A stretch of 64,000 nt of DNA from Macrostomum lignano (taxonomy: Eukaryota): contig NIVC01003792.1 of NCBI GenBank assembly GCA_002269645.1, positions 1-64,000 of the forward strand, written 5' to 3'. The notes below the pieces were generated by a model. That model did not search any database and was not told the origin of the DNA. It worked only from the letters and a program-made list of their open reading frames with translations. The stretch's first letter is position 1; each line of letters starts with the position of its first letter. The position numbers and the translations under genes were made by a program. Below, piece after piece: positions 21,079-56,800 of the stretch.

Positions 21079-21471
21079 CAAGTACCCATCTCCCCAAGTA
21101 CCCATCTCCCCAAGTACCCATCTCCCCAAGTACCCATCTCCCCAAGTACCCATCTCCCCAAGTACCCATCTCCCCAAGTACCCATCTCCCCAAGTACCCA
21201 TCTCCCCAAGTACCCATCTCCCCAAGTACCCATCTCCCCAAGTACCCATCTCCCCAAGTACCCATCTCCCCAAGTACCCATCTCCCCAAGTACCCATCTC
21301 CCCAAGTACCCATCTCCCCAAGTACCCATCTCCCCAAGTACCCATCTCCCCAAGTACCCATCTCCCCAAGTACCCATCTCCCCAAGTACCCATCTCCCCA
21401 AGTACCCATCTCCCCAAGTACCCATCTCCCCAAGTACCCATCTCCCCAAGTACCCATCTCCCCAAGTACCC
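21079..21471. repeat. Perfect 16-bp minisatellite (CAAGTACCCATCTCCC)n, about 24.5 copies
   Basis: Direct reading; no variant copies seen. Confidence 0.98.
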
Positions 21472-23680: not shown

Positions 23681-25146
23681 CTGCCGTCAAGCTGAGTACC
23701 CGGAGCTCTCTAGACTGCTCAGAGCTGACTTCCTGTCCCAGCTGACAGCTCTTCCTGCCTCCGCTGGCAATTGCTCAATTCGGATGCATACAGGGATCGT
23801 GGCACGTGACTCGGGGGGGGGACTCATGCCCTCAGTTCAGACTGTCACCACTGTCTCTAGCGGCCAGTTAGAACTCAAGCCAAGCCATCCATTCATTACG
23901 TTCAATAAATATCCATACACTTGTCTTCCAGGTAAGCCCTCCTGAGAAGTGCACTGCCAACAAGACAAATGAGGGACAGAGTTAAACCCTTTATCTCGAG
24001 CGCAGGCGCGCGTACAAGAGAAGCGAGCTGAAGGGAAAGTCATTTTGCGCGCGAGAGAAGCAGCCCCCTACCCGCGGCATATGTCTGCAAACATGAATAC
24101 TTCATATTTTCCCCGGAGGCTCAAGATGCTGATTAAAGAGAGTTTCTACCCAACTGTGCATAATTAATCGCCTATCCATCAATTATCAACAGAGCGCGCG
24201 CTTACTGAAGGTTATGAATGATCCCGAAATCCCCCAAAATAAAGGGGATAAAAATAAATTTCTAAGAAACAGCATAGAATGACGGCGAAGGCGAGTCGCA
24301 TTTGCAGTCCCGAACTTAGTGCAGCTGTCAGGCATATCGATAGCAGCTTCCTGCATTTCTGAGCCCAGAGAGACTGGCTTCAGTTGGATGAATTGAATTT
24401 TCTGATTTTCTCCCAGAAGATTTTCTGCGCAATTTCTGTAGCGTCTGTCTGAGCGGGCTTAAAAGCTCGCTAATCTCTCGAATTCTTTCGTCTTGGCAGT
24501 TGATTTTTTTTGCAAGCACAATGCTCCGGGAAATATTCTGAGCAAATATTTATCGTCTAAAATTAATAAATTCTGTCTTGGCCAAGCTAAACTGCAAACC
24601 TTGGATAACATTATTGAAAAGTGCCAGCAAAGTTAAGCAGCATTGGCCGCGGATAGCACACAGAGAGGCAGATAAAGCTGAGCCTCACAGTTTATCTGCT
24701 GCGGTAGGGTTGCAGCTCTGAGCAATGGGTCCTTTACGAGTGAAATTAGATAAGTTACCAAAATCTACTGGCAAAATTTTAGCATGGATCCTTTTTTTAG
24801 ATCATAATAAAAAATGAGTGGCAATTAGGATAAAAGAATGAGGGTAGCAATTAGACAAACTTTGATTATAGACGAATCAAATAATTGATTTGCGGACAAA
24901 GTTCTGACTGAGTCCAGCTTATTTAATTTTTCATTTTATTTACCTACTTTTTTACAATTCGTACCTAATACCGGAAACTGAAGATCGTTAATTTTTATTT
25001 CATTTTATGCCTTTTATGCAAAGAAGCCCCCCCCCCAACCGCGGCTGTTCATCACTTCAGAGTGTATATTTTTGGTGAATTTAGATTGTATCCATATTGA
25101 ACGAAAAATCAACTTCAGCTTATGGAGATATTTGAAAGCAGTATAT

Positions 25147-25960
25147 AGGGATATGGGATCTTGGAATATGGGATATGGGATGTTAGGATATGGATATGGG
25201 ATATGAGATATTGGGATATGGGATATTGGGATATGGATATGGGATGTTAGGATATGGGATATGGGATATGGGATATTGGGATAAGGGATATTGGGATATA
25301 GGATATTGGGATATAGGATATTGGGATATTGGGATATGGGATGTTAGAATATTTGATATGGGATATTGGGATATGGGATATGGGATATGGGATATGGGAT
25401 ATGGGATATGGGATATAGGGATATGGGATATGAGATATAGGATATGGGATATTAGGATTTGGGATATTGGGGTATGGGATATTGGGATATGGGATAATGG
25501 GATATGGGATATTGGGATATGGGATATTGGGATATGGGATATTGGGATATGGGATATGGGATATGGGATATGGGATATGGGATATGGGATATTGGGATAT
25601 AGGATATTGGGATATTGGGATATGGGATGTTAGAATATTTGATATAGGATATTGGGATATGGGATATGGGATATGGGATATGGGATATGGGATATTGGGA
25701 TATAGGATATTGGGATATGGGATATTGGGATATGGGATATTGGGATATGGGATATTGGGATATGGGATATTGGGATATGGGATATGGGATATGGGATATT
25801 GGGATATAGGATATTGGGATATGCGATATTGGGATATGGGATATTGGGATATGGGATATTGGGATATGGGATATTGGGATATGGGATATTGGGATATGGG
25901 ATATGAGATGTTAGGATATGGGATATGGGATATGGGATATGGGATATGTGATGTGGGATA
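25147..25960. repeat. Degenerate (GGGATAT)n / GGGATATT simple repeat
   Basis: Direct reading; it accounts for the spurious ORFs at 25190-26159. Confidence 0.97.
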
Positions 25961-26024
25961 TTGGCTATTTAAACATGGTGGATCTGCAGTGCTAAGGCCT
26001 GACGCAGCAGGACTCCCCACTCAC

Positions 26025-29100: not shown

Positions 29101-29446
29101 GACAGCATTCAGCTTTGCGGATGCTGGGGCAGATTACTAAGCAGAGATCTAGACCGAGATTTAAAACTCTTGCAGTGTATGCTCTTCGATTTTACTGCCA
29201 CTATTAGGCTTGGGCAAAAAAAAAACTTGAATAGTGTAAAATTGAATAGTTAGGCAACATTTCAGAGTCTAATTTCTTCATCAGTAGTTAGTGTTTTTTA
29301 ATACTGTATAATGTCGTGCAGTTCAACAAATCAAATCTGGCCCTCTTTCTTTGGCCTAGCCAATCAACAAAAACATTTGCGGATGATATTACAGTCAGAA
29401 TCTTAATCTTCCGGCTATGCATTGATTCTGCCGCTGCCAATGATGG

Positions 29447-29800
29447 TACATTCTGCTTAGACCCACCCCACTCCCTGATTGTACATTCTGCTTAAACCCA
29501 CCCACTCCCTGATTGTACATTCTGCTTAAACCCACCCCACTCCCTGATTGTACATCCTGCTTAAACCCATCCCACTCCCTGATTGTACATCCTGCTTAAA
29601 CCCACCCCACTCCCTGATTGTACATCCTGCTTAAACCCACCCCACTCCCTGATTGTACATCCTGCTTAAACCCACCCCACTCCCTGATTGTACATCCTGC
29701 TTAAACCCACCCCACTCCCTGATTGTACATCCTGCTTAAACCCACCTCACTCCCTGATTGTAAATCCTGCTTAAAGCCACCTCACTTCCTAATTGTACTC
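29447..29800. repeat. 35-bp minisatellite, about 10 copies, just 3' of the Phactr stop codon
   Basis: Unit CCCACTCCCTGATTGTACATCCTGCTTAAACCCAC. Confidence 0.95.
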
Positions 29801-29922
29801 TGAACATGGCTACAATTTCATTCATACTTAATAATTGATTCCAGAAATTCAACAAAAATTATCACACGAGTCCAACAGCAACCCAGTTATTTTAAAGAAA
29901 AATTCCAGATAAGGACCGGCGG

Positions 29923-30015
29923 TCAGGATTTGTGGTAGCGGGTGTACTTTCTGCTGTTCTTATGAACTGGCATCTCCTTGGACTTGAACGCATTGAGCTC
30001 CTTCCTTATCTTCTC
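29923..30015 (-). CDS. PHACTR: Phosphatase and actin regulator (Phactr), last coding exon
   Basis: EKIRKELNAFKSKEMPVHKNSRKYTRYHKS* matches the conserved Phactr C-terminus; CAG acceptor, phase 0. Confidence 0.9.
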   Translation of the reverse strand, partial: EKIRKELNAFKSKEMPVHKNSRKYTRYHKS

Positions 30016-30577
30016 CTGCAATGGGTTTGGGGAGAATTTTCCCGGCTTAGCACAGCAGACTCCATAATCTTGAGGATTATTAATCTTCTGGCGTAATCTA
30101 TTGACAGTTCAATGTCACCGTTTAATCCCAGATAGAAGGATAATCTTATTTGATACTAAAAATGATTAAAATTTGCACTGTAATTTAGGAAATCATCTTC
30201 ATACTCATATAAATGCGAATGCTAGCATCAAAGTTTTTAATAAGACGCGTTTTGACCGACGCGAACTATTTTTGAAAAACAATGACGAGCATGAACTTAT
30301 GCGTCGAACCAAACGGTTGAGCAAATATGTATGATGTGTGAAATTCAATATTCAAGCCAAGGATTTAATCTTAAGAATGTACAAATGGACACTAGCTAAT
30401 AAAGAAAGGGCAGGGACAAATTTAGAATAGAATGCAGTTTCAAGGCTTCAAGTACATCACTTCCGTTTCATACAATCGAGTTCCATATTGTTTATTCTTG
30501 CACATGTAGATGCTCAATCGTTAGGTCTAAGTAATTGAAGGGGAACACTTTACCGCAGGTAATCTTCAGTTTCTCAC

Positions 30578-31368
30578 CTTGTCCACCTCCGAGAGGCAGG
30601 TCCAAGGCTTGTCAGTCACCCTGTCGTAGTCCTCAGTGCGGGTGACCTCGACGTAGTCGCTGAACTTGATGATCTGCCGGTCGCGCAGCTCCTCGACAGT
30701 CGGCCGGTAGCTCAGCTTCCTGGCTAGCAGGCGGATCTGCTGTCGCCGCTCGGATTCCAGCTGCTGGCTGCCGGTGGAGTGCAGGATGTTGCGCTCCAGC
30801 AGCTGCTCGCTGGTTGGCCTCAGGCTGAGCCGCCGCTCCAGCACAGCGCCGATTCTGTCCCGCTCCGACAGCGGCAGCTGCGAGCGAAGCCGCTGCAGGC
30901 CGGCCCGGCGCTCCTGACGGCGGTTTTCCAGGAAACGCGAGAACGGATCGCGACGTTTGAGAGAATCGAAGTTCTGCCGCTGCTGCTGCTGGCCCTGATG
31001 GGGCTGCTGCTTTGAAGCAAGCTGACCGCTACTGCTGCACTTTTTAATGATGCCCTTGGCTGGCTGGCGACCAAAGTCGGGCTCCTTTAAAGGGACCTGC
31101 TCATAGCCTTCAGGCACCGGCTCCTCTGATTCGGCAGGTTCGCAGGCTTCAACAGCGGTGACAGCCGTTGAGAACTCGGTTTGCCGCTGCTGGCCCTCGG
31201 GGATGAACTGAGACAGCGTCGCGAGCTCTCTCGTGTCCTTGCTTGGTTCGCATTCCACCGCGAGTCTAGAGGTGCAATTTTCTGTGGCTGTGAAGGCCAA
31301 GTCCGCACTGCTGACAGTCTGGACTATTGTTGCCGGGAGAGCCGCGGCAACTGTTCCATTCTGTGCGG
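30578..31368 (-). CDS. PHACTR: Phactr main exon: RPEL repeats and PP1-binding region
   Basis: LERRLSLRPTSEQLLERNIL and LARKLSYRPTVEELRDRQII (RPEL repeats), IKFSDYVEV and DYDRVTDKPW; AAG|GTGAG donor and TAG acceptor are in phase. Confidence 0.93.
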
Positions 31369-32935
31369 CTAATGAGATGGGTTAGATAGATTAGCAATCC
31401 ATTCATTAATGATAGCTAATGTAGACCTATATACGAGCAATATTAAGAAAAATAAAGATCGCAGCAGCTTCCGCAATGTTGATAATTGCAGCGAAACAGT
31501 CAGGCACGCAAGAACTGGTCGGATGCTTCCATCTCAAAAGTGACTCTGAAAACCGCTGAAGTAGTGAAAGAGCCCCAGGGAAAAGTTAGCCAAACGCCTT
31601 AAGCCAGACTTCAGCCCTGTGCACGCATGAAATGTTGCCACTTCGTCAAGTGCTAATAGTTCCCGAGGCCCCTGCGGCCCCTCCAATCAATATTGACCGG
31701 CCGTTAGTCCGTCCATTGGCAAAGCGAAAGCACTGCAGCTCATGAATTATTGATGAGCGGAGGGCAAGAATCAACTGCTAAACTGGGGACGGCTCTTGAG
31801 AAAGCAGTCTTGCCCGAACTGTTTCTTTGTGGAGTTGAGCGTTCTAGAAATTCATCTTTCTTGCTTTATTGACTTGGTTTCAAACTTAGAAAGTACTCGC
31901 CCTCTGGGGGGAATACTGTACAAAAAATACACAAAAGCATTTAAATTCCTCTCAACTGAAAGCCCTCCCTGTTAATACGAGTACAATACCGCACCCAGTC
32001 CCTTCTGCTAAAATTTCATTTAATGAAGTTTCATCTCAAGCCTTGGAGTCTTGGAGGTTACAAGTCGAATTTAAAGTCGGATCTACCGCGGGATGAAATA
32101 GATAATTTTTTACGAAGGGTACATGAAAAAAGAAATATTTGCTTATTAGGGAATTATCATTAGGGTTTGTGTGCACCCTGGCGCACTGCACTTTAAGCGA
32201 CATTGTCACACAACCGGCAAGAGGCACAACTGCCCATTCCGCCGACTCCCCTGAGCAGGTACACGAGCGCGTGGATACGTACACAGGCACACACGCACAC
32301 TGGAGTGTACAGCGGCCCTAACTTTATTTATCGTTAGGCATGTACATTTCACTGTGCCTTGGGCGTTGACTCTCAAGAGCGTTAATTGCACGAGCAGAGC
32401 CAAGCCGAGATTCCAATTTAGCCCCAAATTAATGTGACTGTACTTGGGACCGAGCCTGGACCGCTGGGACATCAGAGCGCCGCGCCAGACCACTGGGCGA
32501 CGGCCTCCCTAATGACCTTAGTAATTTTTTGAACGAATTAAAATATGAATCACACAAAAATGATAATAATTTTCGTTCAACTAAGAAAGTGCGACTGCTG
32601 TAAATCGGAGCATTCCAATAAAACTATTCGTCCCATCACCGATGCGCTCCCTGCGTACTCAAGTAGAAGGATGCTGAACTCTCAAACTGTTGTATCTTAA
32701 TTCACCAGAACGTGGAAAGCTACCTGGGACGATTTGGAAGTCTAAAAGGTAAGATACTTGTTAGTCACTTGCTAAGAAGGTTGACCTTTCCTACCGCTAT
32801 TAATTCAAGAACAACTTTAGTCAGCCATTGTGGTGAAAAAGTCCTTTTCCTAGTGAACTTCTCAGGACTTGAGAGTGCTTCTATTGAGTAGTCCATGGCC
32901 TGTCCTCTATTCCCAAGAAATCCAAGAGGCTTCAC

Positions 32936-33182
32936 CCGCTAAGCGACCTCCGCTGTTTCCACGCGTCCTGGCCTCCTGTTCGGACAGCCGAAGCAGTGAT
33001 TCCGCGCCGAACTCCGAGCCAATGCGCCGAGTGTAGCGCCGGGCGGTCACCGAGGACAGCGTCGTGACGCTGTCGGATAGATGGCGCCGGCAGCCGCGTC
33101 CGGCTTGCTGCTGGCTCCTGTGGTGCAGCCGCAGTGACTCGCTGCGCCGGCTGGACAGAGGCGTGGACTGGCAGCTGCCCAT
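32936..33182 (-). CDS. PHACTR: Phactr probable first coding exon (MGSCQS..)
   Basis: ATG at 33182; G|GTGAAG donor is phase 1 and matches the next exon; total CDS 247+791+93 = 1131 nt = 376 aa plus stop. Confidence 0.6.
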
Positions 33183-33638: not shown

Positions 33639-33830
33639 GGGACTGTAGCCTAGTGGTTAGTGTCGGACACCGGACTAAAAGGTCGCGGATTGGATTCTGG
33701 ATCCACTCGGAACAATTTGTGTCCTTAAGCAAGACACTTACCAGTAACTCTGCATTGCTTCAGTTCACCCAGCTGTAAAATGGGTGCCAGCATCAGCTGG
33801 GGTAATTAAGGCTGTGTGTGGCGACCCCCC
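33639..33830 (+). mobile_element. tRNA-derived CORE-type SINE
   Basis: A box TAGCCTAGTGG at 33646-33656 and a degenerate B box, then TGTGTCCTTAAGCAAGACACTT..CAGCTGTAAAATGGG resembling the CORE domain. Confidence 0.75.
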
Positions 33831-34692
33831 GTCCTTGGATTGAACAGTCGTACGCCTCCTTCAGATGCGCCACGCAATAGCTGCGGCTGAGCTGTCGGTT
33901 GCACATCTGCCCATAGGCGCAGGTGCAATCAATTATTATAACTGTTATCATCATTCACGCATACATACAGAGAGCTATTGTGAAGATAGACAAAGAGCGC
34001 ACGTATTATTGAGATACAATTTTATATCAAAATTATTCCGGAAAACGTTGACACAAGAAACTATCTCTTTCCTGTGTGCAGTGTTCTTACTGTCTTTTTT
34101 GAATTTGAAATCGTTTTTTCCTTGCTTAAAATCTGTAAACTAGTATCTAAACACGGAAAATCTAATGAGCCAGGGCCAGCAACGAGGCAGATCATCAGTA
34201 AAAAGTATAATACTGGGGTAGAGTTGCTCTCTTAGTAAATAGAATGACAAAGAGAACGACAATGCAAGCATTAGTTTTAATAGCCAACGCGTTTTGTCAA
34301 AGCTGTGGTCAGGATTCTTGAGGCTACGTACATTCGTTTGCACAAGCCATCGTTGAATGTGCAGCTGGCTGGCATGGCAGGGGCATATTATATTCATTTT
34401 AAAGTCACAAATAGGTCTTATATTCCACATATATGACGAGCGTACACACAGGAATATAATATCTATAGTCTACACGCATGTACTTGTAGATTTGTTCTCA
34501 TAAACTTCACGACTAGCTTCGTTTATGGACAAGATCGAGCAAATCTTCGATGAAATATTTAATTAAAAAGCGCTCTCTAATCCAGACACGATGCTAGAAT
34601 ATATAGTTTCTGCTCTATTTATAATGTAAGAAGATTATTGAATTGATTAGCATTCTCACGCTTAACAATACAAGTGCATCGCTGGCTGAACA

Positions 34693-35182
34693 ATGCAGCC
34701 CCGAGCTCAAGTAGAGCTGGACGCGGCGGCGGCCACGGACCTCTCGCCTAATGACGGCTTTGAATACTACGAGACGCAGCTGTTCGACGTCAAGCATTCT
34801 GCGACCATCCCGCTGGCCGCAGATGTCAATCAGGCGCTGCCTCTCCCTGTTCCTAGTGGTCTCGATGAGCAGCACCGTCTCCTCAGCGCTCTACTTTGCT
34901 CAGTCTCTGCTTCTGATTCTATTCGTGCTCACTCACCTGGTCTCTACCGTGATAGCCATCTTCATCATTGTTGAGATCAGCGTCATCACGCAGAATCGGC
35001 AGCCATTTGACATTCCACTGGCGTTTCGATTTAACAAAAGCTGCAGTACACTGATTGACGTGGCAGACGTGCTCAAGTTCTCCTGTTACTCAAGCGCCGT
35101 GATCTTCTCCGTACTCATGCTGTTTCTAATTATCGCTCTGCTGCTCTGTCTGGACGTCAATCTACATGACAATCTACGATGA
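34693..35182 (+). CDS. Small multi-pass membrane protein gene, probably frameshifted near 34825
   Basis: GC3-rich N-terminal frame from ATG 34693; the hydrophobic helices (SLFLVV.., LLLILFVLTHLVSTVIAIFIIV, SAVIFSVLMLFLIIALLLCL) lie in the overlapping frame 34751-35182. Confidence 0.45.
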
Positions 35183-36247
35183 AACTCGCGCGGCAGTGCG
35201 TCTCAGGGTCTTCACAGCGATATTATAATATTACTCATTACTACGGTTGCAGTTACGAGTTTCACTGCGTTAAACCTCTTTAAGCCATGCATGCATTTCA
35301 ACAGCCAGTAGCTCGTATATCGTTGCTAAAATAATTGCTATCTTGTTACGTCGCGTATACTTAAGCACCGCGGATAGACCATGTACTTTTCGTCTCTGTA
35401 CTTTTCGTCTTCCGTCAAGCCTGCAGCACCGGTACAACTTTGTGTACAGTGACACCGAATCTTTCATATTGAATGTACGATATGTACGAGCTATGAATCA
35501 ATAGTTTTCAATTGATTCAATCGATTCATATATAAATGATTCAATATATGAATCAATAGTTTTTTAGCAGAATGTAGGGAGTTTGCGACTACAGATAGGT
35601 CGTAGGTGCCTACATGTACATTTAATTTTGTATAAATAATATATTGTAGCGTGCACACTGGGTGAGCGTACGCATGTATATACGAGTAGTTACTGCATGC
35701 CTGCCTGCGAGAATATCCTCGTGCTTGTATGTGCTCAGGAGTGAGTGGATCGCGGAATAAGCAAAGATTGTTCCATCGCTGCGTGTGGGACGTCATATAT
35801 GGTGCCAACAGCCCTGCTGCGAACATTCTGTAGTGCTACTCCTCCTCGGGTTCTTGAAGATGTTCCTAGAAATAGAACCCGCTGCTCCTGAAGTAGCTAG
35901 ATAGCACCGTTGTACTACCTATCGATTTGCCTGAAATGAACCTAAAACGTTAGCCTTGACTTGGTAGGGTTGCTGCCACCTTGGTGTGCGGACTCGACGC
36001 GTCGGCAGAGTTGTCTATCCGTCACCTGAAATAAAATAACGAAGTCGCTCAGAGCAAAGGCAAATCTGTAAAATGTCTCGACATGTCTCTTAGTAGAATG
36101 CTGCTCGAACCTGAAAACCTGTAAAACCTGAAATGAGAGAGGAGAGCTCGGAGGCAGAGAGGCAGCTCCGGTCGAGCCCAGACAGGACGACGCAATCGGT
36201 TCCGCGTTGCTCCACGATCTGGAGAAAAATGGCTCGCAGATGCTCCG

Positions 36248-36674
36248 TATTTATAGCCGAGCGGACCCCCAAAAGTGACGTGAGTTTCATGCGGTGAGCG
36301 CGTGAAACTTCCTTATTTGGTCACTAAAATCATGCGAGCGACGCGTGATTCAAGGCCAACTTCCAAATAAGGCAACCCTGTCACGCAGCAGTGGCGTGAC
36401 TCAAGGTCAGTGGCCACGCACAGTGTGCGTGCACAGTCACGTGCTTTTCTGTGCTAAAAATAGAACATGGGCGGATGAGTCATCCTGTTTACTCCCTCTA
36501 GGCCGCCCTTCACTCCGCGCAGGTGATGAGTCATCCTGCTACGCCTCCTCAGCGCGAGTGGGAAGATATTGAGTGTGGCTGCCCACGCCTGCTCAGGCGA
36601 TGAGTCATCGGGCAGTAAACACTTAGGCCCAGCACAGGGTAACTCTCTCTCTCTTGCTCAGGTGGACTGAGTCA
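36248..36674 (-). promoter_or_regulatory. TATA promoter with clustered CArG, MEF2, AP-1, E-box and CRE-like motifs
   Basis: TATAAATA (minus) 36248-36255; TGACGTGA 36276-36283; CArG CCTTATTTGG 36311-36320 and CCAAATAAGG 36363-36372; MEF2 CTAAAAATAG 36454-36463; CACGTG 36438-36443; TGASTCA at 36397, 36476, 36527, 36601 and 36668. Confidence 0.75.
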
Positions 36675-37281
36675 CTGTGCAGCGGACCACAGCACTCTTG
36701 GGAAAGCTAGTGAATGCTGCTGAATAGCCAGTTAGCAGCCAGTCACTACAATTCATATGGATTATTATGCAGACGTTCAAAAAGGGAATAATTCAGCTTC
36801 TTAAAAATATTTGCATGGTTCGTAGCGTGTTGCGTAATTCTATCGAATACTCGAGTAGTCCATGCTTGTCTCCCTGCGACTGCTGCTTGTTGACTATGGG
36901 TTGACTGTCCACCTTGATCTGCACTAACAAATATACTATTTGCAAATTCAAACTTGTCACAATAATTCCAAGACGCACGAGCGTACTTAGTTACTAGAAG
37001 ATCGTTAAGCAATCGAAAGTATGAAACGACTAATTGGTAAACTACACTCGTAGTTGTGAGCTTCAAGACAAAGAAAACAACAATGCACGGTGTGATTTAT
37101 TTTCACGCGTTTACTATTTTTAAAACAAAGTTTGTTCTCTTTTCAACTCAGATTTCCTCACAAGATTTTCAATGTCCAAGAAAAATGAAGATTGCGTTCT
37201 CTTGCGCAGATTTAGCAAACAGCAATCATAAAAGAAAAGGCAGCGCAGTTTTTAGAACGAATAAAAAATTGCGCGTCCGAA

Positions 37282-40113
37282 TCAGTTCAGAACAAAGCGC
37301 TCTTTCAGCATGGCCTTCGGCTTGTGCCGCTTCTCATTGTAGGCCCGGTAGCGCTCCTCTTCGTTCAGCTGCCGCTGTCGTTTCACCTCATTTTCCATAC
37401 GGCGAACCCGCGTCTGCCTCTTGATGGCGTCTAGCGGCACCCGGGTGTAGCGCAAGCTGAACGACACGTCCTCTTCCAGCACCGGCACGTTTGCCACCGG
37501 CGACGGGAACCGGTAGGTGCACCGATTGGCGCTCGAGTCCAACGCTTTTTTGGCCGCTTCGGAGTCCATCGCTTTCACCAGCTTCTTGTTCTTCTCCGGG
37601 TAATAATCCACGGGCAGGTAGCTGATGCCCCGGCTTGTAAGGTCCGTTTTGAACTGCTTCTCCACGGCGTACTTTTGCTTGCGGAGCTCGAACATGTCGC
37701 AGAGTCGATCAGGCGTGCTGTACAGCCATATGAAGTTTTGCCGGAAAACAAGGTCTTCTGGCTTGTAGTAGAACTCCTTGGGTGTGCGCAGCGCCAGGAA
37801 GCTTAAGCCTTTGCGCGTGGCTTCGCACACCAGCGCCAGGCTCTCTACAAGCACACCTGGGATCACTTCACGAATTGTGCGGCTGTTCCAGTTAACGTTC
37901 TCCGTGATGATAGATGGGTTTACTTCCAGCAGCCAAGGCCTGCCACCTTCATCGATACAGATATCCAACGAGAAGACTTGGTAGCAGTTAGCCTTTTCCT
38001 TGATCTGGTCCAGTACGCTGCAACAAATGTTGGACACCATTGAGCGCATGGTGCGAAGGAATGCTTCATTTGTGCTAAAGTGCGTCCATGGGTCTTGACC
38101 TGGCGGCACGTCTGCAGGGTCAAAATCGGCAGCAGGTGCAGCCCCTGTGGCACCGGCAGTCCCAGCAGCACCACTCTCCGAGACAGTCGCACCCGCTGAA
38201 CTAGTTCCAGGGGCCGCGGCAGCACCAGATGTAGAAGCAGGGCTGTTGGCTCCTACACTTGGTGATGCGGAACCACTTGGCTGCACAGTACTAGTCGAAG
38301 TCGCCTGAGCAGTAGCATCTAGATTTTGAGCAGTCTTGTCCTTCTTTTGAGGTTTTGGGTTGAGCTCTGGCGCCTTAGTTGCCATCATGATGAGTGGTAG
38401 ATTTTGCTTGTTGCCCTTCAGGCAGCCGTGACGCACAGCAAAGTTGTACTCTTCGCACTCGTCATTGTCAAACTCGCCAGCATAAAAACCAACTCGATTA
38501 ATTGGCTCCAATGGATCCAGTTCGACCGATGGCTTCCTGTTTTTCTTTTTCTTGGCGTTGTTCTGCGTCTGAAGCACGTCCTCAGAGGTGTTGTCACCCG
38601 ATGTAGTCGTCGCATTGTTAGCACTGGCCGGTGGCTGGGTGGCTGGATCGATTTTGGGTCCGAAAGTGCGCCAAACTCGAGTACCTGCTAGGTGCTGTCG
38701 AGCTCTGAATTTCTCATTCTTCTGCATTTCCTTGTACGGATCGGGGACTTTTCTGACAAAGCCCGGATGCAGAAATCCCAGGACGCGCTTAAACCGAGTA
38801 ACGATTATCAGCAGGAACATTCGAATATCAAACTTCTGACCGGTGTTGGTGAGCATAGGATTTTTTATGTACCTCTGCACGACGAAATTTTGTCCCCACA
38901 TAAATCGGTTGGAAGTCTTCACCTTAAGGAAGGTGCGAAGTTGCTCCGCAGAGGAAAGAATTCGAACGCCACGTCCGCTGCGCATGTACGACGGCTTCAC
39001 AATCCAGTGGGCGTCGGGAGCTGTCCTAGATACATCTTCTATGAACACGTTCTGCTGAAGTGACGACGAAAACACCTTTGTCTCGGGCACAAAAATTTTG
39101 CTCACGAAACACGGGCACATGCTGCCGTCGTGCAGTTTGTCGATTCCGAGCTCGTTTCGTGCCTCCTTTGACATGGTTTCGAAGCAGCCAGGCTCTGTAC
39201 AAGGCTCCATGTTGTGTCGAGCGTACTGGTGCGGACACAGCATCTGACACGGAATTCGTTTCCGGGTATGAGGACAGAGATGCTCCTTGAACTGTATACC
39301 CTTGTGCAGAGTGTTGCTTTGCAAGGTGAAAGCGAGGCTTTGCTTATCCTTTAAATAGATGTCCAACGGCAAACGGTTGACAAAATGGTGCTCCGGTCGC
39401 AGAGTGGGTAGCACCTCGGTGGCCTTGCGCTTGCCCAGCCAGCAGAAAACACGCTCACCCCCGTCCGTCGGCAGATTCTTGATCTTCTCCATTTTCATAA
39501 AGTCGCAGAAGGCGGTAAAAAGCAGATCAAGGCAGCCCACTCCGTTGTTTTCTGTCTCGATGAAAAACTTTGTATTGTTGCAAAGCAGCTGGGGATAGCT
39601 TTCCTGATACAGGCGATTGTACATAGCCAGATGCTCGCCGAATCTGTACAGCTGTGTGCTGATAGAAAATGCTTTGCGTTCTTCAACCTTTGGCAACTCA
39701 GGCTCACCCTTGCCCTTCTTCTTTTTCTTCTTAGCGTTGCTCTTGTTTTCAATGTCATCGTTGGATGCATTTGTACTGTGCGAGGCCGGCAGCACCTCAG
39801 GAATAACTGCAGCTGTAGTTGCGGGCAGGCTCGTCTCAGCCACCACCACAGTCTCCGCAGCTTCTGGCGCCGTATTCGGCTCCACTACTCGTGGCACTTG
39901 CGAGTTGCTCTGGCTGTTTTGGTGAAAGGAGGACTCCGTGGACATTGGCTTAGCCTTCTTAAGCGACTGTTGGTCCATAGCGAACACATTCTTTATATCT
40001 TCTGTGGTAGCTGTCCCATCGCAATACTCGGAGTAGTTTGCTCGAAGCACTGCCGCATCGGCGCTGTTCGCTTTCTTTTTTAGAGGCATCTGCACGGGCG
40101 CGGCCTCTTGCAT
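37282..40113 (-). CDS. Tubulin-tyrosine-ligase-like (TTLL) ATP-grasp protein, 943 aa, single exon
   Basis: WIVKPSYMRSGRGVRI, FVVQRYIKNPML..KFDIRMFLL and YQVFSLDICIDEGGRPWLLEVNPS are TTL-family motifs; subfamily not assigned. Confidence 0.88.
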   Translation of the reverse strand: MQEAAPVQMPLKKKANSADAAVLRANYSEYCDGTATTEDIKNVFAMDQQSLKKAKPMSTESSFHQNSQSNSQVPRVVEPNTAPEAAETVVVAETSLPATTAAVIPEVLPASHSTNASNDDIENKSNAKKKKKKGKGEPELPKVEERKAFSISTQLYRFGEHLAMYNRLYQESYPQLLCNNTKFFIETENNGVGCLDLLFTAFCDFMKMEKIKNLPTDGGERVFCWLGKRKATEVLPTLRPEHHFVNRLPLDIYLKDKQSLAFTLQSNTLHKGIQFKEHLCPHTRKRIPCQMLCPHQYARHNMEPCTEPGCFETMSKEARNELGIDKLHDGSMCPCFVSKIFVPETKVFSSSLQQNVFIEDVSRTAPDAHWIVKPSYMRSGRGVRILSSAEQLRTFLKVKTSNRFMWGQNFVVQRYIKNPMLTNTGQKFDIRMFLLIIVTRFKRVLGFLHPGFVRKVPDPYKEMQKNEKFRARQHLAGTRVWRTFGPKIDPATQPPASANNATTTSGDNTSEDVLQTQNNAKKKKNRKPSVELDPLEPINRVGFYAGEFDNDECEEYNFAVRHGCLKGNKQNLPLIMMATKAPELNPKPQKKDKTAQNLDATAQATSTSTVQPSGSASPSVGANSPASTSGAAAAPGTSSAGATVSESGAAGTAGATGAAPAADFDPADVPPGQDPWTHFSTNEAFLRTMRSMVSNICCSVLDQIKEKANCYQVFSLDICIDEGGRPWLLEVNPSIITENVNWNSRTIREVIPGVLVESLALVCEATRKGLSFLALRTPKEFYYKPEDLVFRQNFIWLYSTPDRLCDMFELRKQKYAVEKQFKTDLTSRGISYLPVDYYPEKNKKLVKAMDSEAAKKALDSSANRCTYRFPSPVANVPVLEEDVSFSLRYTRVPLDAIKRQTRVRRMENEVKRQRQLNEEERYRAYNEKRHKPKAMLKERFVLN

Positions 40114-40759: not shown

Positions 40760-41338
40760 TCACAGGACCTCGCAGTGAAAAGCTGGTTTTATTGGCTTTT
40801 TTGGAACCAACACAGCACGAATAGCCTCGTCAAACACGCTCTTCAGCCCTTTCTGAGTCAGGGCTGAACACTCAAGGTACTTCGCAGCGTTAATCTCCTT
40901 GGCCATTGTCATACCCTGCAGGTGGGTGATGGGGGCCAGCTTCTTTGCTTTTAGCTCTTTAATTGTCTCCTTGTCGTCGCGCAGGTCCATTTTTGTGCCA
41001 ACCAGCACGATTGGAGCGTTTGGACAGTGATGGCTCACCTCCGGGTACCACTTGGATCGAACGTTCTCAAAGCTTGTCGGACTGACGAGGGAAAAGCAGA
41101 TGATAAACACGTCAGTCTCGGGGTAACTGAGCGGTCGGAGTCGGTCGTAGTCCTCCTGGCCGGCTGTGTCCCACAGGCCCAGGTTAATAGGCCGGTCATT
41201 GGCCACCACGACGGCTGAGTAGTGATCGAACACTGTCGGCACATAGGTGCTGGGAAAGGCGTTCTCAACGTAAGAGATGAGCAGACAGGTCTTGCCAACT
41301 GTTCCGTCGCCAACAAAGACGCACTTTACCGACTGCAT
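40760..41338 (-). CDS. RAC: Rac-type Rho GTPase paralogue 1 (192 aa, divergent switch I, CAAX CEVL)
   Basis: [36 protein letters not shown]; intronless; ATG at 41338. Confidence 0.95.
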
Positions 41339-41344
41339 TCTTAG

Positions 41345-41385
41345 GATACTGTGAGATACTGTGAGATACTGTGAGATACTGTGAG
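41345..41385. repeat. 10-bp repeat (GATACTGTGA)x4 just upstream of the Rac paralogue 1 ATG
   Basis: Direct reading. Confidence 0.9.
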
Positions 41386-42408
41386 AATGAAATTTCCGAA
41401 ATTCTGTCTCTCGCAAGCCGTGTCAGCGTCACGCGTTTTATAATATTTGTGGCTTTCGAAATCGCTTATTTTTAGACTATGCCTCACTCAAACGATAGAG
41501 AAATAACACAGTAAGCTCGTACCTTCTCTGCCCAGTCGCCCTCTCCTCTTCATGCCCTCTCTTATTTTTCATGCTTGCTACAAGCTATTAATAGTCAGCT
41601 ACTGCGTAATTAGTAAGCATGCAAATTCTTTCCATAGCATCCTTGGATATGGAAGTGACAGAAACATTGCCACCTACACGAATCTCAACTGCTGCACCGG
41701 AAAGCAAATAATTAGTTGAATTTGGGGTTCAACTTTTTCTTAGATTCAATGTATCGATTCAATCTAGCAAATTGAAACTGAAAAACAACTTTACGGTTTC
41801 TTAATGGTACGAATTGATTAGAAACGCTGTGACACCCTGCCATGCATATTAAAATGTTTAGAAATACAGAAAAATCTGTCTATTCTCAAGCACATTCATT
41901 CGCTAAGGAGGGCAAGGCAAGCAGCATGCATCAACCTTCCCTCTCGAAAGGGTGAAGCTGCATAAACTCTCCACTTGGCCAGCGCTCGCAACCTTCTACT
42001 CATTTCAGAGCCCGATGCGATGCCCAGAGCAAAAGAGACGATGCCTTTGATGCCATCATCGCCTTCTCTTCTCTGCTGGTATGACTGACTAGCACGCAGC
42101 CTGAAAAAAATTGCAGTGTGCACAGAGCGTGCTTTTGTGCGCGCGCCCCACCCCAACGCCCCCTTGCCTAGCAGTTATCCCGACCCGCAAGTTTTGTCTG
42201 TGCAGACTAGCAATAGTCAGATCTATTTTTGCCAAGTCTACACAGAAACTGGAACTCAGCTATCTATCTACTTGTTTCTTTCATTCCTTTTTGCATATCG
42301 AAGCCTATCTCAGACATAAAAGAAAATTCTTACCAGGCGCAGAAATAGAATTTAGTTAGAAGATACGCTGTAAGCCAGCTCCTCTCTGTTTTAGACCTTC
42401 TGAGCGCG

Positions 42409-42996
42409 ATGCAGGCCATCAAGTGTGTTGTGGTTGGAGATGGAGCTGTTGGAAAAACCTGCCTCCTCATCTCCTACACGACCAACGCCTTTCCTAACGA
42501 GTACATCCCGACCGTGTTCGATAACTACTCGGCGAATATCATGGTGGACAGCAAGCCCATCAACCTGGGCCTGTGGGACACGGCTGGCCAGGAGGACTAT
42601 GACCGGCTGAGGCCGCTGAGCTACCCGCAAACTGACGTGTTTCTGGTCTGCTTCTCCCTCATCAGCCCGGCCAGCTATGAGAACGTGCGGGCCAAGTGGT
42701 ACCCGGAGGTGAGACACCACTGTCCCAGCGCTCCGGTCGTGCTGGTCGGCACCAAACTGGACCTGCGCGACGATCCAGAAACGATTGAAAAGCTAAAGGA
42801 AAAGAACCAGGCCCCCATCACCCACCTGCAAGGCATGTCGATGGCTAAGGAGATCGGTGCGGAGAAGTACCTGGAATGCTCAGCCCTGACTCAGAAGGGA
42901 CTGAAGAACGTGTTCGACGAGTCAATTCGAGCCGTGCTGCGGCCTCCCAAGCCCACACAGAGAGGACGAATTGGTGGGAAATGCAAAATTTTGTAG
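42409..42996 (+). CDS. RAC: Rac1-like GTPase paralogue 2 (195 aa, CAAX CKIL)
   Basis: Near-canonical Rac1 sequence [17 protein letters not shown]..; intronless. Confidence 0.97.
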
Positions 42997-43879
42997 TCAA
43001 AGCAGATTTTGGCTTTGACTTCACACACCGAGTTGCACGAAATTATATTCAAGATCAGCGCAGTTTTCTATAAGTAATAATAAATACTGCTTCTAACCTC
43101 AGTTTGTTTATGCAAATTAATTCGCGGATCTAAATCAATGCTTTCTAGACGATATTTTTAAGAAGAAGCAACATTAAAGGATGTTAGTTTCGGAGAACAA
43201 AGTTTTGCTCCCTTTCTCGCTTCCAAACAGAAGATTAATCTAAGATGAAAAATGTTTGATACTGCATGTTAATTTTCATATTTTATCCAGTCTTTGTTGT
43301 TTTAATCAAGTGGGCCCAAGCTGATCGAAAAAATTTTCTATTTTTGTTGGCTCAAACATACAGATATTTCAGCTGCGTACGGCTTTAATGCTGCCTTTTA
43401 TCCTAGAAATAATATTCTATATGTTTATGCTGCATTATGCAAATTTATGGTCGACATTAAGAGGCCTAGCCTCTATTTCTATTCTCTAGAAGACCACAGA
43501 AATTGAAGCCAAAATATAGCGGTGTAGAATCTAACAATATGTACAGACTTTTTCTTCATCGTTTAAAAAACGACATTGTAAACAATGTTCAAAAATGCTA
43601 TAAATTGATTTTCTACTGTTCTAAAAAGTTATTTTATGGCTATTTTTACTCTTAATTTTTTAGTGCACCCGCTGTGTTTGTATAATATTTACTTAGTTTT
43701 CTGAAAAATATTGTTCAAACAAATCAATTCAATTTTTATGGTGAATCATTTTAATCATCAAGGAATTTTCGACAATAAACAATATAAACTACCTACGTGT
43801 ATAAATTCTTCGATCTTTTAAGTTTGTTTATCATCCTTAGACAACAATATTTGTCTTTAGACTTCTCTTGAGTTTCAAA

Positions 43880-44470
43880 TTTCTGGGCCTGCAAACGTCG
43901 GGTAGAACCGAGTTCGTCCCGAGGTGAGTGATCGAGCCTGGCCCTGTTGGAAAACCGGGCAGTGGCAGATAAAGTGCTCAGCGTTTTCACTGTCTGAGCG
44001 ACAAAAGGGGTATCGCTCCTCCGGTACCTGGCCCTGAGATGGCGAGGGTAGCAGCCATGCCCGGAGAGGGCTATGCTAACCGCTCCCTGCTCCCTGCTAA
44101 AAGATCCCTGCGGTTGAGCCGAAGAAGGGTCTATATGCATTAAGGGGAGGGGCAGGGGCGGCAGCATGGGATTGCCTGCAGTTCCGAGTGTCGTGCCATC
44201 TGGGGAGACGCTCGGAGTCAGCCCAGCGACTAACTCGGTCAGAGATTGGGGCACCTGGGCCCCGCCGGCGGAGCAAACCTTGGCCAGCAGGTCAGCGCAC
44301 TTGTTGCCGAGGAAACCAGCGTGGCCCGGAATCCATTCGAGCTCCGCCCAGCTGGGTGTTGCAGTCCAGGATAGATTTGTAGCTGGCGGTGCTACGTACG
44401 GCAGAGAGCCCGAAGGGCTGCCTGGCTGTCGGAGTGAACAGACACTCAGAAAAGACTTCGGTTCAGGCAC
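43880..44470 (-). mobile_element. Degraded 3' fragment (RNase H and CCHC region) of a LINE related to 50035-55618
   Basis: WIPGHAGFLGNKCADLLAK and ALSGHGCYPRH parallel [19 protein letters not shown] and [11 protein letters not shown] of the long element; frameshifted. Confidence 0.8.
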
Positions 44471-45141: not shown

Positions 45142-45723
45142 ATGCAAACGATCAAGTGCGTTGTGGTTGGCGATGGAGCAGTCGGAAAAACATGTCTGCT
45201 CATCTCCTATACTACCAACGCGTTTCCTAACGAGTACATCCCGACCGTGTTCGACAATTACTCCGCCAATGTGATGGTGGACGGCAAGCCCATCAACCTG
45301 GGCCTGTGGGACACGGCTGGCCAGGAGGACTATGACCGGCTGAGGCCGCTGAGCTACCCTCAAACCAACGTGTTCCTTGTCTGCTTCTCCCTCATCAGCC
45401 CAACTAGTTACGAAAATGTTCGATCGAAGTGGTACCCGGAGGTAAGTCACCACTGTCCCAACACTCCGATCGTGCTGGTCGGCACCAAACTGGACCTGCG
45501 AGACGATCCAGAAACTGTTGAAAAGTTGAAGGCCAGGTATCTGGCCCCCATCACGCACCTGCAAGGAATGACAATGGCAAAGGAAATCAACGCAGTGAAG
45601 TACCTGGAGTGCTCAGCTCTGACTCAGAAGGGGCTGAAGACTGTGTTCGATGAAGCTATACAAGCTGTAATGTGCCCGAAGCCGAAGAGCAGCAAGAAGG
45701 GACTCAGCTGCAAACTGCTTTAG
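45142..45723 (+). CDS. RAC: Rac1-like GTPase paralogue 3 (193 aa, CAAX CKLL)
   Basis: All G motifs and the Rho insert are intact; intronless. Confidence 0.97.
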
Positions 45724-48953: not shown

Positions 48954-49725
48954 TCAAGGTTGGCTCAATGCTCTCGAAGGATCCAAGTAGCACTTCTTCG
49001 TGAGTCTGGACACTGTTTCCGAGACTGTGCTGAACCGTCGGTGCCCATGCTGTACCGGAGTGTTCTTCAAACGGTAGGCAACACTGGTCATCATGCTTAG
49101 GATATCGTTGCACTGGTACTCATCTGAAATAACTTTACTAAGAGCCTGGACGTAAAGCGAGCCCTTGCTCTCATCCCGAAAAGTGACGTTTCCTTCCGTA
49201 TTAGCAAAGCACATTAGAGTATCGGCGTCACAAGCGCGAGCGGGCACGCTCGATGACTGCGGCGCATCAACTGCTAAGCCTCTGCTCGAACACGAATTTT
49301 CCTCGATATGCTGGAAAGAAGAATAATTTGGGCTTGTCTCGCAGAGCCTCGCACTCGTTGGCCCGAATCGTGTCGTGATTGAAGAGATTTCCACTGGCAC
49401 GCCTTCTCGATCATAGATCCAGCCGTTACTTCCGTGACCCATCACAAATAAAATAAAGCAGCCAATCTTACTCAGCTCATCCCTCCGGGTGAGCTCGTCG
49501 TTGATAAACTCGAAGATTTCATGGCTCTTTGGGTTAAATTTCTTCACGTCAAAATTAAGTCTGGTAAACAAAGTTGACAAAATTTCAACATCTATCTCGG
49601 ATCCGACTCGATCGGAAAATTCAGACTCGCAGTTGTACTTGTGCACATTGATCAAGAGAAAGCGGCGCGTTGGCTGAGTCACTGGGTAGGCTTCATCCCC
49701 TGCTCCAGGATCGAGCATGTGTAAT
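48954..49725 (-). pseudogene. Caspase (C14) catalytic-domain exon lacking a functional active-site Cys: pseudo-caspase or pseudogene
   Basis: RVGSEIDVEIL, CFILFVMGHG and GSLYVQAL..SRLTKKCYL align with the intact caspase. A 1-nt deletion at about 49360-49364 hides KPKLFFFPAYRG in another frame, and the frame is restored about 25-30 codons later. TAG acceptor has the same phase as in the intact paralogue. Confidence 0.85.

Positions 49726-49911: not shown

Positions 49912-56800
<6,889 letters not shown>

What the first reader, a model, noticed from the sequence alone, without database searches (positions are those of the whole stretch)
36248..36674. Textbook immediate-early/wound-response promoter: TATA + 2 CArG + MEF2 + 5 AP-1 sites, aimed at Phactr
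Five exact TGASTCA sites lie within about 280 bp (random expectation about 1 per 8 kb), three of them in a GATGAGTCATC palindrome. Two CArG boxes, a consensus MEF2 site, an E-box and a CRE-like site lie just upstream of a minus-strand TATAAATA. The nearest recognisable downstream gene on that strand is Phactr (ATG about 3 kb away). SRF is activated by RPEL-containing MRTF on G-actin depletion, so SRF-driven expression of an RPEL protein would form an actin-sensing feedback loop, with AP-1 adding injury input. The target gene is inferred.
Basis: partly seen in the sequence, partly recalled or inferred. Interest (0 to 1): 0.72.

Follow-up and report, generated by a model that had tools for sequence, protein, structure and literature searches.

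The report
Predicted stimulus-responsive promoter upstream of flatworm Phactr
A 430-bp stretch of the Macrostomum lignano (regenerating flatworm) genome carries a far-from-random cluster of AP-1, SRF/ETS, MEF2, CRE-like and TATA motifs laid out like an inducible promoter facing a Phactr gene 3 kb away, but nothing here shows that it fires, what it transcribes or that it responds to wounding.

Summary
All five TGASTCA sites, three of them GATGAGTCATC, both CArG boxes, the MEF2 site, CACGTG, TGACGTGA and the minus-strand TATAAATA are at the stated places. The AP-1 cluster is far beyond chance (about 1e-5 for the whole window). It is not a tandem repeat and has no other copy in the sequence held.

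The window is Macrostomum lignano contig NIVC01003792.1. The module is a GC-rich island about 400 bp past the poly(A) signal of a minus-strand TTL-family gene. All oriented elements point to the minus strand. I also found that both CArG boxes carry an abutting ETS core (CCW6GGAAGT, 2 found against 0.06 expected). That is the SRF plus ternary-complex-factor layout of fos/egr-type genes.

The next recognisable minus-strand gene is a true Phactr (RPEL repeats, PP1-binding tail, E = 3e-23 to Phactr1 structures). Its inferred ATG is at 33182, behind a strong splice acceptor.

The target remains inferred. An annotated orphan ORF on the opposite strand and dispersed repeats lie in between, and 39% of M. 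lignano genes are trans-spliced. No TSS, expression or cross-species evidence could be obtained. This is a plausible new member of a known promoter kind, of moderate interest.

The parts
36248..36255 (-). TATA box TATAAATA; predicted TSS 25-35 nt downstream (A at 36230 in CCATTTT or A at 36220 in CCAGATC)
   Evidence: TSS position inferred from sequence only
36276..36283 (.). CRE-like / UPRE-like bZIP site TGACGTGA (minus strand TCACGTCA, intact CGTCA half-site), about -50 to -60
36307..36320 (-). Proximal composite SRE: CArG box CCAAATAAGG with abutting ETS core (CCAAATAAGGAAGT on the minus strand), about -90
36359..36372 (-). Distal composite SRE: CCTTATTTGGAAGT on the minus strand, about -140. 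The W6 core is inverted relative to the proximal box but the GGAAGT flank is in the same direction.
36397..36409 (.). AP-1 site 1 (TGACTCA) overlapping a nuclear-receptor extended half-site TCAAGGTCA
36438..36443 (.). Palindromic E-box CACGTG
36454..36463 (.). Consensus MEF2 site CTAAAAATAG
36474..36484 (.). AP-1 site 2, GATGAGTCATC
36520..36535 (.). CAGGTG E-box overlapping by one base AP-1 site 3, GATGAGTCATC
36599..36609 (.). AP-1 site 4, GATGAGTCATC
36659..36674 (.). CAGGTG E-box 3 bp from AP-1 site 5 (TGAGTCA); distal edge of the module
36100..36700 (-). GC-rich island (52-59% GC) holding the whole module, flanked by 34-42% GC sequence
36108..36175 (-). Pyrimidine-rich stretch with three TTTCAG/TTACAG acceptor-like sites about 60-110 nt after the predicted TSS. 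It could be a trans-splice acceptor region or first-exon sequence.
   Evidence: function inferred
37096..37101 (-). AATAAA poly(A) signal of the upstream TTL-family gene (CDS 37282-40113, minus strand); marks the upstream limit of the intergenic gap
29923..33182 (-). Candidate target: Phactr gene model of 376 aa. Exon A 33182-32936 (ATG 2 nt after the acceptor ttctgtccag), exon B 31368-30578, exon C 30015-29923.
   Evidence: The exon B/C junction is supported by homology; the exon A junction only by reading-frame compatibility.
34693..35182 (+). Intervening annotated orphan ORF BOX15_Mlig016741g1. It is 162 aa in the duplicate contig; in the window a 1-nt frame difference from that copy cuts it to 143 aa. 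No homologues were found.

Best explanation
The region 36220-36674 is a compact TATA-containing RNA polymerase II promoter with its proximal enhancer, on the minus strand of a Macrostomum lignano contig. It sits in the gap after the poly(A) signal of a TTL-family gene.

Read 5' to 3' on the minus strand, it has:
- five AP-1 (Jun/Fos-type bZIP) sites, two next to CAGGTG E-boxes (one overlapping the 11-mer by a base, one 3 bp from the core);
- a MEF2 site and a CACGTG box;
- two SRF sites, each fused to an ETS core (an SRF plus ternary-complex-factor type of serum response element);
- a CRE-like bZIP site at about -55;
- TATAAATA and an initiator-like sequence.

The most likely mode of action is signal-dependent initiation. 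MAPK-activated ETS/SRF and AP-1, with CREB/ATF-type factors, would recruit Pol II to a TSS near 36220-36230.

The transcript would run down the minus strand through a 3-kb leader that is removed as an intron or an outron. It would reach the acceptor 2 nt before the Phactr ATG at 33182. The product would be an RPEL-repeat, PP1-binding actin regulator.

Shown: the motifs, their statistics, their orientation, the gene neighbourhood and the identity of Phactr. Inferred: that the element is active, the TSS, the link to Phactr, and the inducing signal.
For: - Motifs are present and the AP-1 cluster is non-random.
- The composite CArG+ETS element occurs twice in the same orientation as the TATA box, against 0.06 expected. 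The inner W6 core is inverted between the two while the flank is kept, which a simple duplication would not produce.
- The four distal AP-1 sites share only the core and a short flank, and there is no tandem repeat. This fits retention of the motif rather than of neutral repeat sequence.
- The module is a GC-rich island.
- It lies 400-850 bp downstream of the minus-strand AATAAA at 37101 that follows the TTL-family gene.
- Distances from the TATA box are in the usual range: CRE about -55, SREs about -90 and -140.
- No conserved minus-strand ORF and no Rfam RNA lies between the predicted TSS and Phactr.
- The only annotated feature in that interval is an orphan ORF with no homologues and the highest substitution density between the two genomic copies.
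- Phactr is confirmed by RPEL Pfam hits, homologues and matches to Phactr1 structures.
- The Phactr open frame in exon B has no ATG, so an upstream exon or a spliced leader is required. A strong acceptor sits 2 nt before the ATG at 33182.
- In M. lignano, regions up to 2 kb upstream of the TSS sufficed for faithful reporter expression (PMC5730564).
- E-box plus AP-1 combinations are sufficient regeneration-response elements in zebrafish (PMC9922731).
Against: - No transcription, TSS or chromatin data were available to these tools.
- The only related genomic copy is 100% identical across the module within a 99.3% identical duplicate, so it carries no conservation signal.
- The older paralogous locus has no counterpart of the module.
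- BOX15_Mlig016741g1 on the opposite strand has its own TATA-like box (34616-24) and a + strand AATAAA at 36030. A minus-strand transcript would therefore run antisense through it.
- The exon A to exon B junction is supported only by frame compatibility, a 1-in-3 chance.
- Trans-splicing and polycistronic units occur in this species.
- Phactr loci of two other spiralians showed no comparable cluster within the sequence fetched. That test is weak.
- Consensus matches are not evidence of factor binding.
Confidence: 0.45

Rival explanations
1. It is a real minus-strand promoter, but it drives a separate unannotated transcript immediately downstream rather than Phactr. This could be a long non-coding RNA, an RNA antisense to Mlig016741, or a short-peptide RNA. 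Phactr would then start from its own promoter or receive a spliced leader.
For: - The annotation shows that RNA evidence exists over 34.7-35.2 kb, but the ORF chosen there is an orphan with no homologues.
- Minus-strand ATTAAA signals lie at 35626, 34563 and 34281.
- Acceptor-like TTTCAG sites lie about 95 nt after the predicted TSS. A 97-codon open frame spans 36235-35945 and would be in frame with a leader-donated AUG.
- The 3-kb gap to Phactr holds dispersed repeats.
Against: - No minus-strand ORF in the interval has any homologue among 5.8 billion proteins, except a 28-aa repeat fragment.
- No Rfam family is found there.
- The Phactr open frame needs an upstream exon or leader, and no other TATA/motif cluster lies between 36200 and 33200 on the minus strand apart from TATAAATA at 34616-23.
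Confidence: 0.2
2. The module is the same promoter but works as a tissue-specific (muscle or contractile-cell) promoter rather than an immediate-early or wound promoter. SRF, MEF2 and bHLH factors would set steady expression, and the AP-1 sites would modulate it.
For: - Two CArG boxes, a consensus MEF2 site and E-boxes (CACGTG and two CAGGTG) within 350 bp of a TATA box are the classic layout of muscle-gene and miR-1/133 promoters (my own knowledge; motifs).
- In human PHACTR1, an intronic variant is predicted or reported to alter MEF2 binding (PMC4917897).
- Phactr is a cytoskeletal regulator.
Against: - Both CArG boxes carry an ETS core, typical of TCF-dependent immediate-early SREs rather than MRTF/myocardin-type muscle CArGs (my own knowledge).
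- Five optimal AP-1 sites and a TATA-proximal CRE are features of an inducible promoter.
- No muscle miRNA lies downstream.
Confidence: 0.25
3. The cluster is an enhancer rather than a TSS. It would serve one or more neighbours: the three Rac genes, the TTL-family gene, or Mlig016741, whose 3' end it adjoins.
For: - The neighbourhood is rich in cytoskeletal genes: three Rac paralogues at 40.7-45.7 kb, a TTL-family gene, and Phactr.
- TATTTATA reads as a TATA-like sequence on either strand.
- AP-1 clusters are typical of distal injury-responsive enhancers.
Against: - The oriented elements (TATAAATA and both CCW6GGAAGT) agree in direction, and the spacing from the TATA box is promoter-like.
- In M. 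lignano, tested regulatory information was proximal, within 2 kb upstream of the TSS.
Confidence: 0.12
4. It is a relic of a mobile element, such as a solo LTR carrying its own stress-responsive promoter, and is not a host regulatory element.
For: - LTR retrotransposons make up 21% of this genome.
- Several M. lignano LTR families have acquired functional stress elements (heat shock elements) upstream of a TATA box (PMC12801592).
- An enhancer-rich stretch followed by TATA is the U3 layout of an LTR.
Against: - No second copy exists in the 64-kb window, the duplicate contig or the paralogous locus.
- Candidate TG...CA boundaries with target-site duplications occur at about the chance rate and lack terminal inverted repeats.
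- No retroelement ORFs are adjacent.
- Genome-wide copy number could not be tested with these tools.
Confidence: 0.08

Closest known systems
Immediate-early gene promoters of the c-fos / Egr-1 type (serum response element = CArG + ETS/TCF site, TATA-proximal CRE, AP-1-like site)
   Same: TATA box, a CRE-like site about 55 nt upstream, CArG boxes with an adjoining ETS core, and AP-1 sites, all within 450 bp and in one orientation.
   Different: - The gene downstream is not a transcription factor but, at best, a Phactr.
- The ETS core overlaps the CArG GG instead of being spaced from it.
- There are five optimal AP-1 sites, more than in those promoters.
- Nothing is known about inducibility.
- Whether flatworms have an Elk-type TCF was not tested.
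Regeneration- or injury-responsive enhancers built from AP-1 plus E-box motifs (zebrafish fn1b RREs, PMC9922731; AP-1-rich injury enhancers, PMC10077677)
   Same: A homotypic AP-1 cluster with E-boxes, two of them next to AP-1 sites; the host is a regenerating animal.
   Different: Those elements were defined by transgenic assay and chromatin data; this one is defined by sequence only. It has a TATA box and looks like a promoter rather than a distal enhancer.
Muscle-type CArG/MEF2/E-box promoters (actin, SM22, miR-1/133; my own knowledge)
   Same: Paired CArG boxes, a consensus MEF2 site, E-boxes and a TATA box.
   Different: The CArGs are ETS-flanked and AP-1 sites dominate. No muscle gene or muscle miRNA lies downstream.
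M. lignano LTR promoters with acquired stress elements (PMC12801592)
   Same: Same species; compact TATA promoters preceded by clustered stress-factor sites.
   Different: The elements are AP-1/SRF sites, not heat shock elements. No LTR boundaries, no repeat copies and no retroelement genes are found here.
Human PHACTR1 regulation (multiple promoters; intronic MEF2-site variant rs9349379; PMC4917897)
   Same: A Phactr-family gene associated with a MEF2 site.
   Different: The human site is intronic and distal. No SRF/AP-1 promoter of a Phactr gene is known to me or was found in the papers searched.

Membership tests
TATA-dependent RNA polymerase II core promoter | TATA box about 25-35 nt upstream of an initiator/TSS | tested here: met
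   TATAAATA 36255-36248 (minus strand); Inr-like CCA(36230)TTTT and CCA(36220)GATC. This is sequence evidence only.
TATA-dependent RNA polymerase II core promoter | Mapped capped 5' ends at the site | not testable with these tools
   RAMPAGE data for M. lignano exist (PMC5730564) but cannot be reached here.
TATA-dependent RNA polymerase II core promoter | Intergenic position upstream of a same-strand transcription unit | tested here: met
   The module lies after the TTL-family gene's AATAAA (37101) and before Phactr (33182-29923), both on the minus strand. An opposite-strand orphan ORF lies between.
Serum response element (SRF + TCF type) | CArG box CC(A/T)6GG | tested here: met
   Two exact boxes 52 bp apart.
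Serum response element (SRF + TCF type) | Adjacent ETS core GGA(A/T) | tested here: met
   CCW6GGAAGT occurs twice in the same orientation, against 0.06 expected.
Serum response element (SRF + TCF type) | SRF/TCF binding and serum- or ERK-dependent induction | not testable with these tools
   Needs ChIP, EMSA or a reporter assay.
AP-1-dependent injury/regeneration-responsive element | Clustered TGA(C/G)TCA sites beyond chance | tested here: met
   5 sites in 278 bp; P about 1e-5 window-wide; none of 300 simulations exceeded 3.
AP-1-dependent injury/regeneration-responsive element | Injury-induced accessibility or reporter activity | not testable with these tools
   No data could be reached, and no M. 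lignano wound-enhancer paper was found.
AP-1-dependent injury/regeneration-responsive element | Conservation of the sites in related species | tested here: inconclusive
   The only homologous DNA is a 99.3% identical duplicate, identical across the module. The paralogous locus lacks it.
Solo LTR / retroelement promoter | TG...CA termini with a target-site duplication | tested here: not met
   Only chance-level candidates, with no terminal inverted repeats.
Solo LTR / retroelement promoter | Multiple dispersed copies | tested here: inconclusive
   No copy in about 110 kb of M. lignano sequence held here. The whole genome could not be searched.
Phactr (phosphatase and actin regulator) family, for the candidate target gene | C-terminal RPEL repeats | tested here: met
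   Pfam RPEL, E = 3.3e-13, two repeats above threshold; match to the Phactr1 RPEL structure 4B1Z, E = 1.4e-15.
Phactr (phosphatase and actin regulator) family, for the candidate target gene | Conserved PP1-binding C-terminal tail | tested here: met
   Residues 304-375 of the model align to the Phactr1 chains of 6ZEE/6ZEF, E = 3e-23.
Phactr (phosphatase and actin regulator) family, for the candidate target gene | N-terminal RPEL repeat | tested here: not met
   No RPEL-like motif in any frame between 31300 and 37500. The closest homologues are also short forms without it.

The most novel reading that the evidence does not exclude
The module is a genuine ERK/JNK-responsive immediate-early promoter that switches on a Phactr (G-actin-sensing PP1 regulator) within hours of injury in a regenerating flatworm. 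That would tie wound signalling directly to actin/PP1 control. It would also give M. lignano, where transgenesis works, its first compact wound-inducible promoter.
Probability: 0.15. Interest if true: 0.55.

Novelty: new member of a known kind. Interest (0 to 1): 0.35.

Why it matters
If it is active and injury-inducible, this 0.5-kb fragment would be a ready-made inducible driver for transgenic M. lignano. It would also be a defined cis-regulatory entry point into the flatworm early wound response, which so far is described mostly at the level of induced genes.

It would add a Phactr-family gene to the set of SRF/AP-1 targets. The SRF sites with a fused ETS core could also be used to ask whether the split between TCF and MRTF cofactors of SRF predates vertebrates.

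If it is inactive or muscle-specific, it remains an ordinary predicted promoter.

Tried and rejected
1. **Phylogenetic footprinting.** The only homologous DNA reachable was a 99.3% identical duplicate contig, identical over the module. The older TTL-family paralogue locus has a different downstream gene and no counterpart. This gave no information.
2. **Transcript evidence through protein look-ups.** No M. lignano Phactr protein or RNA-derived contig is in the collections. Phactr is not annotated in the NCBI record.
3. **Hidden gene between the TSS and Phactr.** All minus-strand open frames of at least 40 aa were joined and searched. The only hit was a 28-aa fragment of a dispersed repeat. Pfam found nothing.
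4. **The intervening orphan ORF.** An exhaustive HMMER search found no homologues.
5. **Known RNA genes or muscle miRNAs downstream.** None were found.
6. **Solo LTR.** No boundaries and no other copies.
7. **Coding explanation for the repeated GATGAGTCATC.** Rejected: the third copy is in a different frame, the ORF is only 75 aa, and there is no Pfam hit.
8. **Conserved AP-1/CArG clusters at Phactr loci of Cichlidogyrus and Ridgeia.** None were found. Ridgeia's seven TGAGTCA sites are a 49-bp minisatellite that duplicates an exon edge.
9. **Literature.** I found no paper on Mlig016741, on SRF control of Phactr genes, or on Macrostomum wound enhancers.
10. **Published M. lignano promoter sequences.** The copies in the supplement are cut short, so motifs could not be compared.

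Full report
**Source and setting**

The window is Macrostomum lignano (free-living regenerating flatworm), assembly GCA_002269645.1, contig NIVC01003792.1. The 943-aa TTL-family ORF at 37282-40113 (minus strand) matches that record exactly. Its cluster is named BOX15_Mlig005554g1 [Macrostomum lignano].

The genes near the finding are mostly intron-poor:
- three Rac GTPase paralogues (40760-41416 minus, 42409-42996 plus, 45142-45723 plus);
- the TTL-family gene;
- an RPEL-repeat ORF at 30566-31300 (minus strand).

**Observation**

- TGASTCA occurs at 36397, 36476, 36527, 36601 and 36668. Only six more occur in the rest of the 64 kb, which matches the shuffle expectation of 6.08 per window.
- Three of the sites are the 11-mer GATGAGTCATC. 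The 9-mer ATGASTCAT occurs nowhere else (3 found against 0.35 expected).
- A Poisson bound gives about 1e-5 for five sites in any 300 bp of the window. None of 300 Markov simulations had more than three.
- The cluster is not a tandem repeat. TRF finds nothing there, and an alignment of the four distal sites shows that only the core and a few flanking bases (GATGACTCATC..CCTG) are shared.
- By contrast, the seven TGAGTCA copies I met in the Ridgeia Phactr locus are simply a 49-bp minisatellite.

The remaining motifs are:
- CArG boxes at 36311-20 and 36363-72;
- MEF2 site CTAAAAATAG at 36454-63;
- CACGTG at 36438-43;
- TGACGTGA at 36276-83;
- minus-strand TATAAATA at 36248-55.

**New details**

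- On the minus strand both CArG boxes read CCW6GGAAGT, so each is fused to an ETS core. This 14-mer pattern occurs twice against 0.06 expected, both times in the direction of the TATA box.
- The A/T cores of the two boxes are reverse complements of each other, while the GGAAGT flank keeps its direction. A plain duplication would not give this. It suggests that the composite is what is being kept.
- CAGGTG E-boxes sit next to two AP-1 sites: one overlaps the 11-mer of site 3 by a base, the other lies 3 bp from the core of site 5. TCAAGGTCA overlaps AP-1 site 1.
- Initiator-like CCATTTT and CCAGATC lie 25 and 35 nt after the first T of the TATA box.
- The module is a 52-59% GC island between sequences of 34-42% GC.

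**Position**

- A minus-strand AATAAA at 37101 follows the TTL-family stop codon (37282) by 180 nt. The module therefore begins about 400 bp after that gene's likely 3' end.
- Measured from a TSS at 36220-36230, the CRE-like site is at about -55, the two SREs at about -90 and -140, and the AP-1/MEF2/E-box block at -170 to -450.
- This is the layout of a compact inducible promoter of the fos/egr type (my own knowledge of those promoters).

**What lies downstream on the minus strand**

- The RPEL ORF is a true Phactr. Pfam RPEL gives E = 3.3e-13. The best homologues are annotated phosphatase and actin regulators of annelids, a mite and a monogenean flatworm.
- A last exon (30015-29923) encoding IRKELNAFKSKEMPVHKNSRKYTRYHKS is found by tblastn.
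- The assembled 376-aa model matches Phactr1 chains in PP1 complexes at E = 3e-23 and the RPEL-actin complex at E = 1.4e-15.
- The open frame of the main exon extends upstream to 31368 without any ATG. The start must therefore come from an upstream exon or from a spliced leader.
- An ATG at 33182 sits 2 nt after a strong acceptor (ttctctcctaccaacttgttctgtccag). Its exon can join the main exon in frame (donor after 32936, acceptor before 31368). That junction rests on frame compatibility alone.

**What lies in between**

- The NCBI record annotates one gene in the interval, on the opposite strand: BOX15_Mlig016741g1. It is 162 aa in the duplicate contig. In the window a 1-nt frame difference from that copy cuts it to 143 aa.
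- It has no Pfam domain. It has no homologue among 1.84 billion representative proteins other than its own copy.
- The 1 kb around it carries the highest substitution density between the two genomic copies outside one other interval at 46-47 kb.
- It does have a TATA-like TATTTATAA 70 nt before its ATG and a + strand AATAAA at 36030. It may therefore be a real young gene nested antisense in a Phactr leader intron, or a spurious ORF called on a transcribed leader. I cannot tell which.
- All minus-strand open frames of at least 40 aa between 36235 and 33190 were searched together. The only hit was a 28-aa piece of a dispersed repeat.
- Two dispersed repeats (33644-33914 and 32163-32510) have copies in an unrelated locus.
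- No Rfam family and no miR-1-like sequence is present.
- The interval therefore looks like intron, outron or intergenic DNA.

**Limits**

- M. lignano trans-splices 38.8% of its genes and has polycistronic precursors. RAMPAGE, spliced-leader and poly(A) maps exist, but only in the authors' genome browser (PMC5730564).
- The duplicate contig (NIVC01003617.1) is 99.3% identical overall and 100% identical over the module. Given 0.29% substitutions, that is not significant.
- It reflects the known redundancy of this assembly: 180 Mb in blocks at least 95% identical.
- The older TTL-family paralogue locus has a different downstream gene.
- No conservation test was therefore possible, and no RNA-derived contig of this species is in the collections.

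**Interpretation**

I consider it likely that this is a functional regulatory module. I consider it somewhat less likely than not, though the single best option, that it is the promoter of a minus-strand unit whose coding gene is Phactr.

In mammals, SREs with an adjoining ETS site are the TCF (Elk-type, ERK-driven) class. TCFs compete with the RPEL-containing MRTFs for SRF (my own knowledge; SRF cofactor competition is also stated in the abstracts of PMC8806183 and 10.1101/2024.02.26.582060). The sequence therefore argues for MAPK input, not for the G-actin-sensing MRTF loop.

The wound-response idea is reasonable. AP-1 plus E-box combinations are sufficient regeneration-response elements in zebrafish and Xenopus (PMC9922731). 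It is still untested here.

The same CArG/MEF2/E-box set would also suit a muscle promoter. A human PHACTR1 variant is linked to MEF2 binding (PMC4917897).

A mobile-element origin has a precedent in this species, where LTRs have acquired heat shock elements (PMC12801592). Here I found no LTR ends and no other copies, but the full genome could not be searched.

**Verdict**

This is a new, well-formed member of a known class of promoter, of moderate interest. Its practical value lies in the fact that M. lignano is transgenic-ready and that the decisive data (5'-end maps, a reporter assay) are within easy reach of the laboratories that hold them.

Noticed in passing
window 1-18000: A complex satellite: units of about 3.7 kb (with sub-units of about 0.88 and 2.8 kb) repeated at least five times. 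Each unit contains GC-rich blocks of a roughly 52-bp minisatellite (CCCCACGCCCCTGGCATTAGTTAGTCTAGTGGTATAGTGGGGGCTGGCCG) at 1-660, 10600-12100 and 14300-15800.
   Followed up: no
window 40760-41416 (-), 42409-42996 (+), 45142-45723 (+): Three intronless Rac-type GTPase paralogues within 5 kb, arranged as inverted repeats (77-82% complementary arms). They sit next to a TTL-family gene and Phactr, forming a small neighbourhood of cytoskeletal regulators.
   Followed up: partly
window about 34422, against L002 15721-19991: The duplicate contig carries a 4.3-kb block of tandem repeats (two arrays) that the window lacks, inside the interval between the predicted promoter and Phactr.
   Followed up: partly
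window 34693-35182 (+): The orphan ORF BOX15_Mlig016741g1 differs in frame by 1 nt between the window and the duplicate contig (143 against 162 aa). It looks like a small membrane protein with two hydrophobic stretches and has no homologues anywhere.
   Followed up: yes
window 33644-33914 and 32163-32510: Dispersed repeats with 76-87% identical copies in an unrelated M. lignano locus (L003). A piece of the first is also embedded in a UniRef GPCR gene model of this species. By eye the first looks tRNA-derived, but ARAGORN finds no tRNA.
   Followed up: partly
window 50296-55412 (+), 43793-44470 (-): A GC-rich (56-62%) non-LTR retrotransposon with reverse-transcriptase and RNase H-like ORFs broken into several frames. 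A separate RNase H-like fragment lies between the Rac genes.
   Followed up: no
window 57835-60250 (-): Transposase-like ORFs of the THAP9/P-element kind (Pfam TNP-like RNase H N-terminal domain, E = 4.6e-9).
   Followed up: no
window 48954-49718 (-) and 61951-62601 (-): Two single-exon caspase-domain ORFs (Peptidase_C14, E = 4.6e-25 for the first; the second identified by eye) about 13 kb apart.
   Followed up: no
window 63194-63694 (-), 29424-29843, 20977-21500, 25100-26000: Several short-period tandem arrays: a 45-bp repeat that encodes 15-aa repeats inside an ORF, a 35-bp array just after the Phactr 3' end, and 8/16-bp and 15-bp microsatellite blocks.
   Followed up: no
L005 11465-11879 (Ridgeia piscesae Phactr locus): A 49-bp minisatellite (8.5 copies) that duplicates an exon edge of the tubeworm Phactr gene. 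Each unit happens to contain TGAGTCA. This shows how an apparent AP-1 cluster can arise without function.
   Followed up: yes
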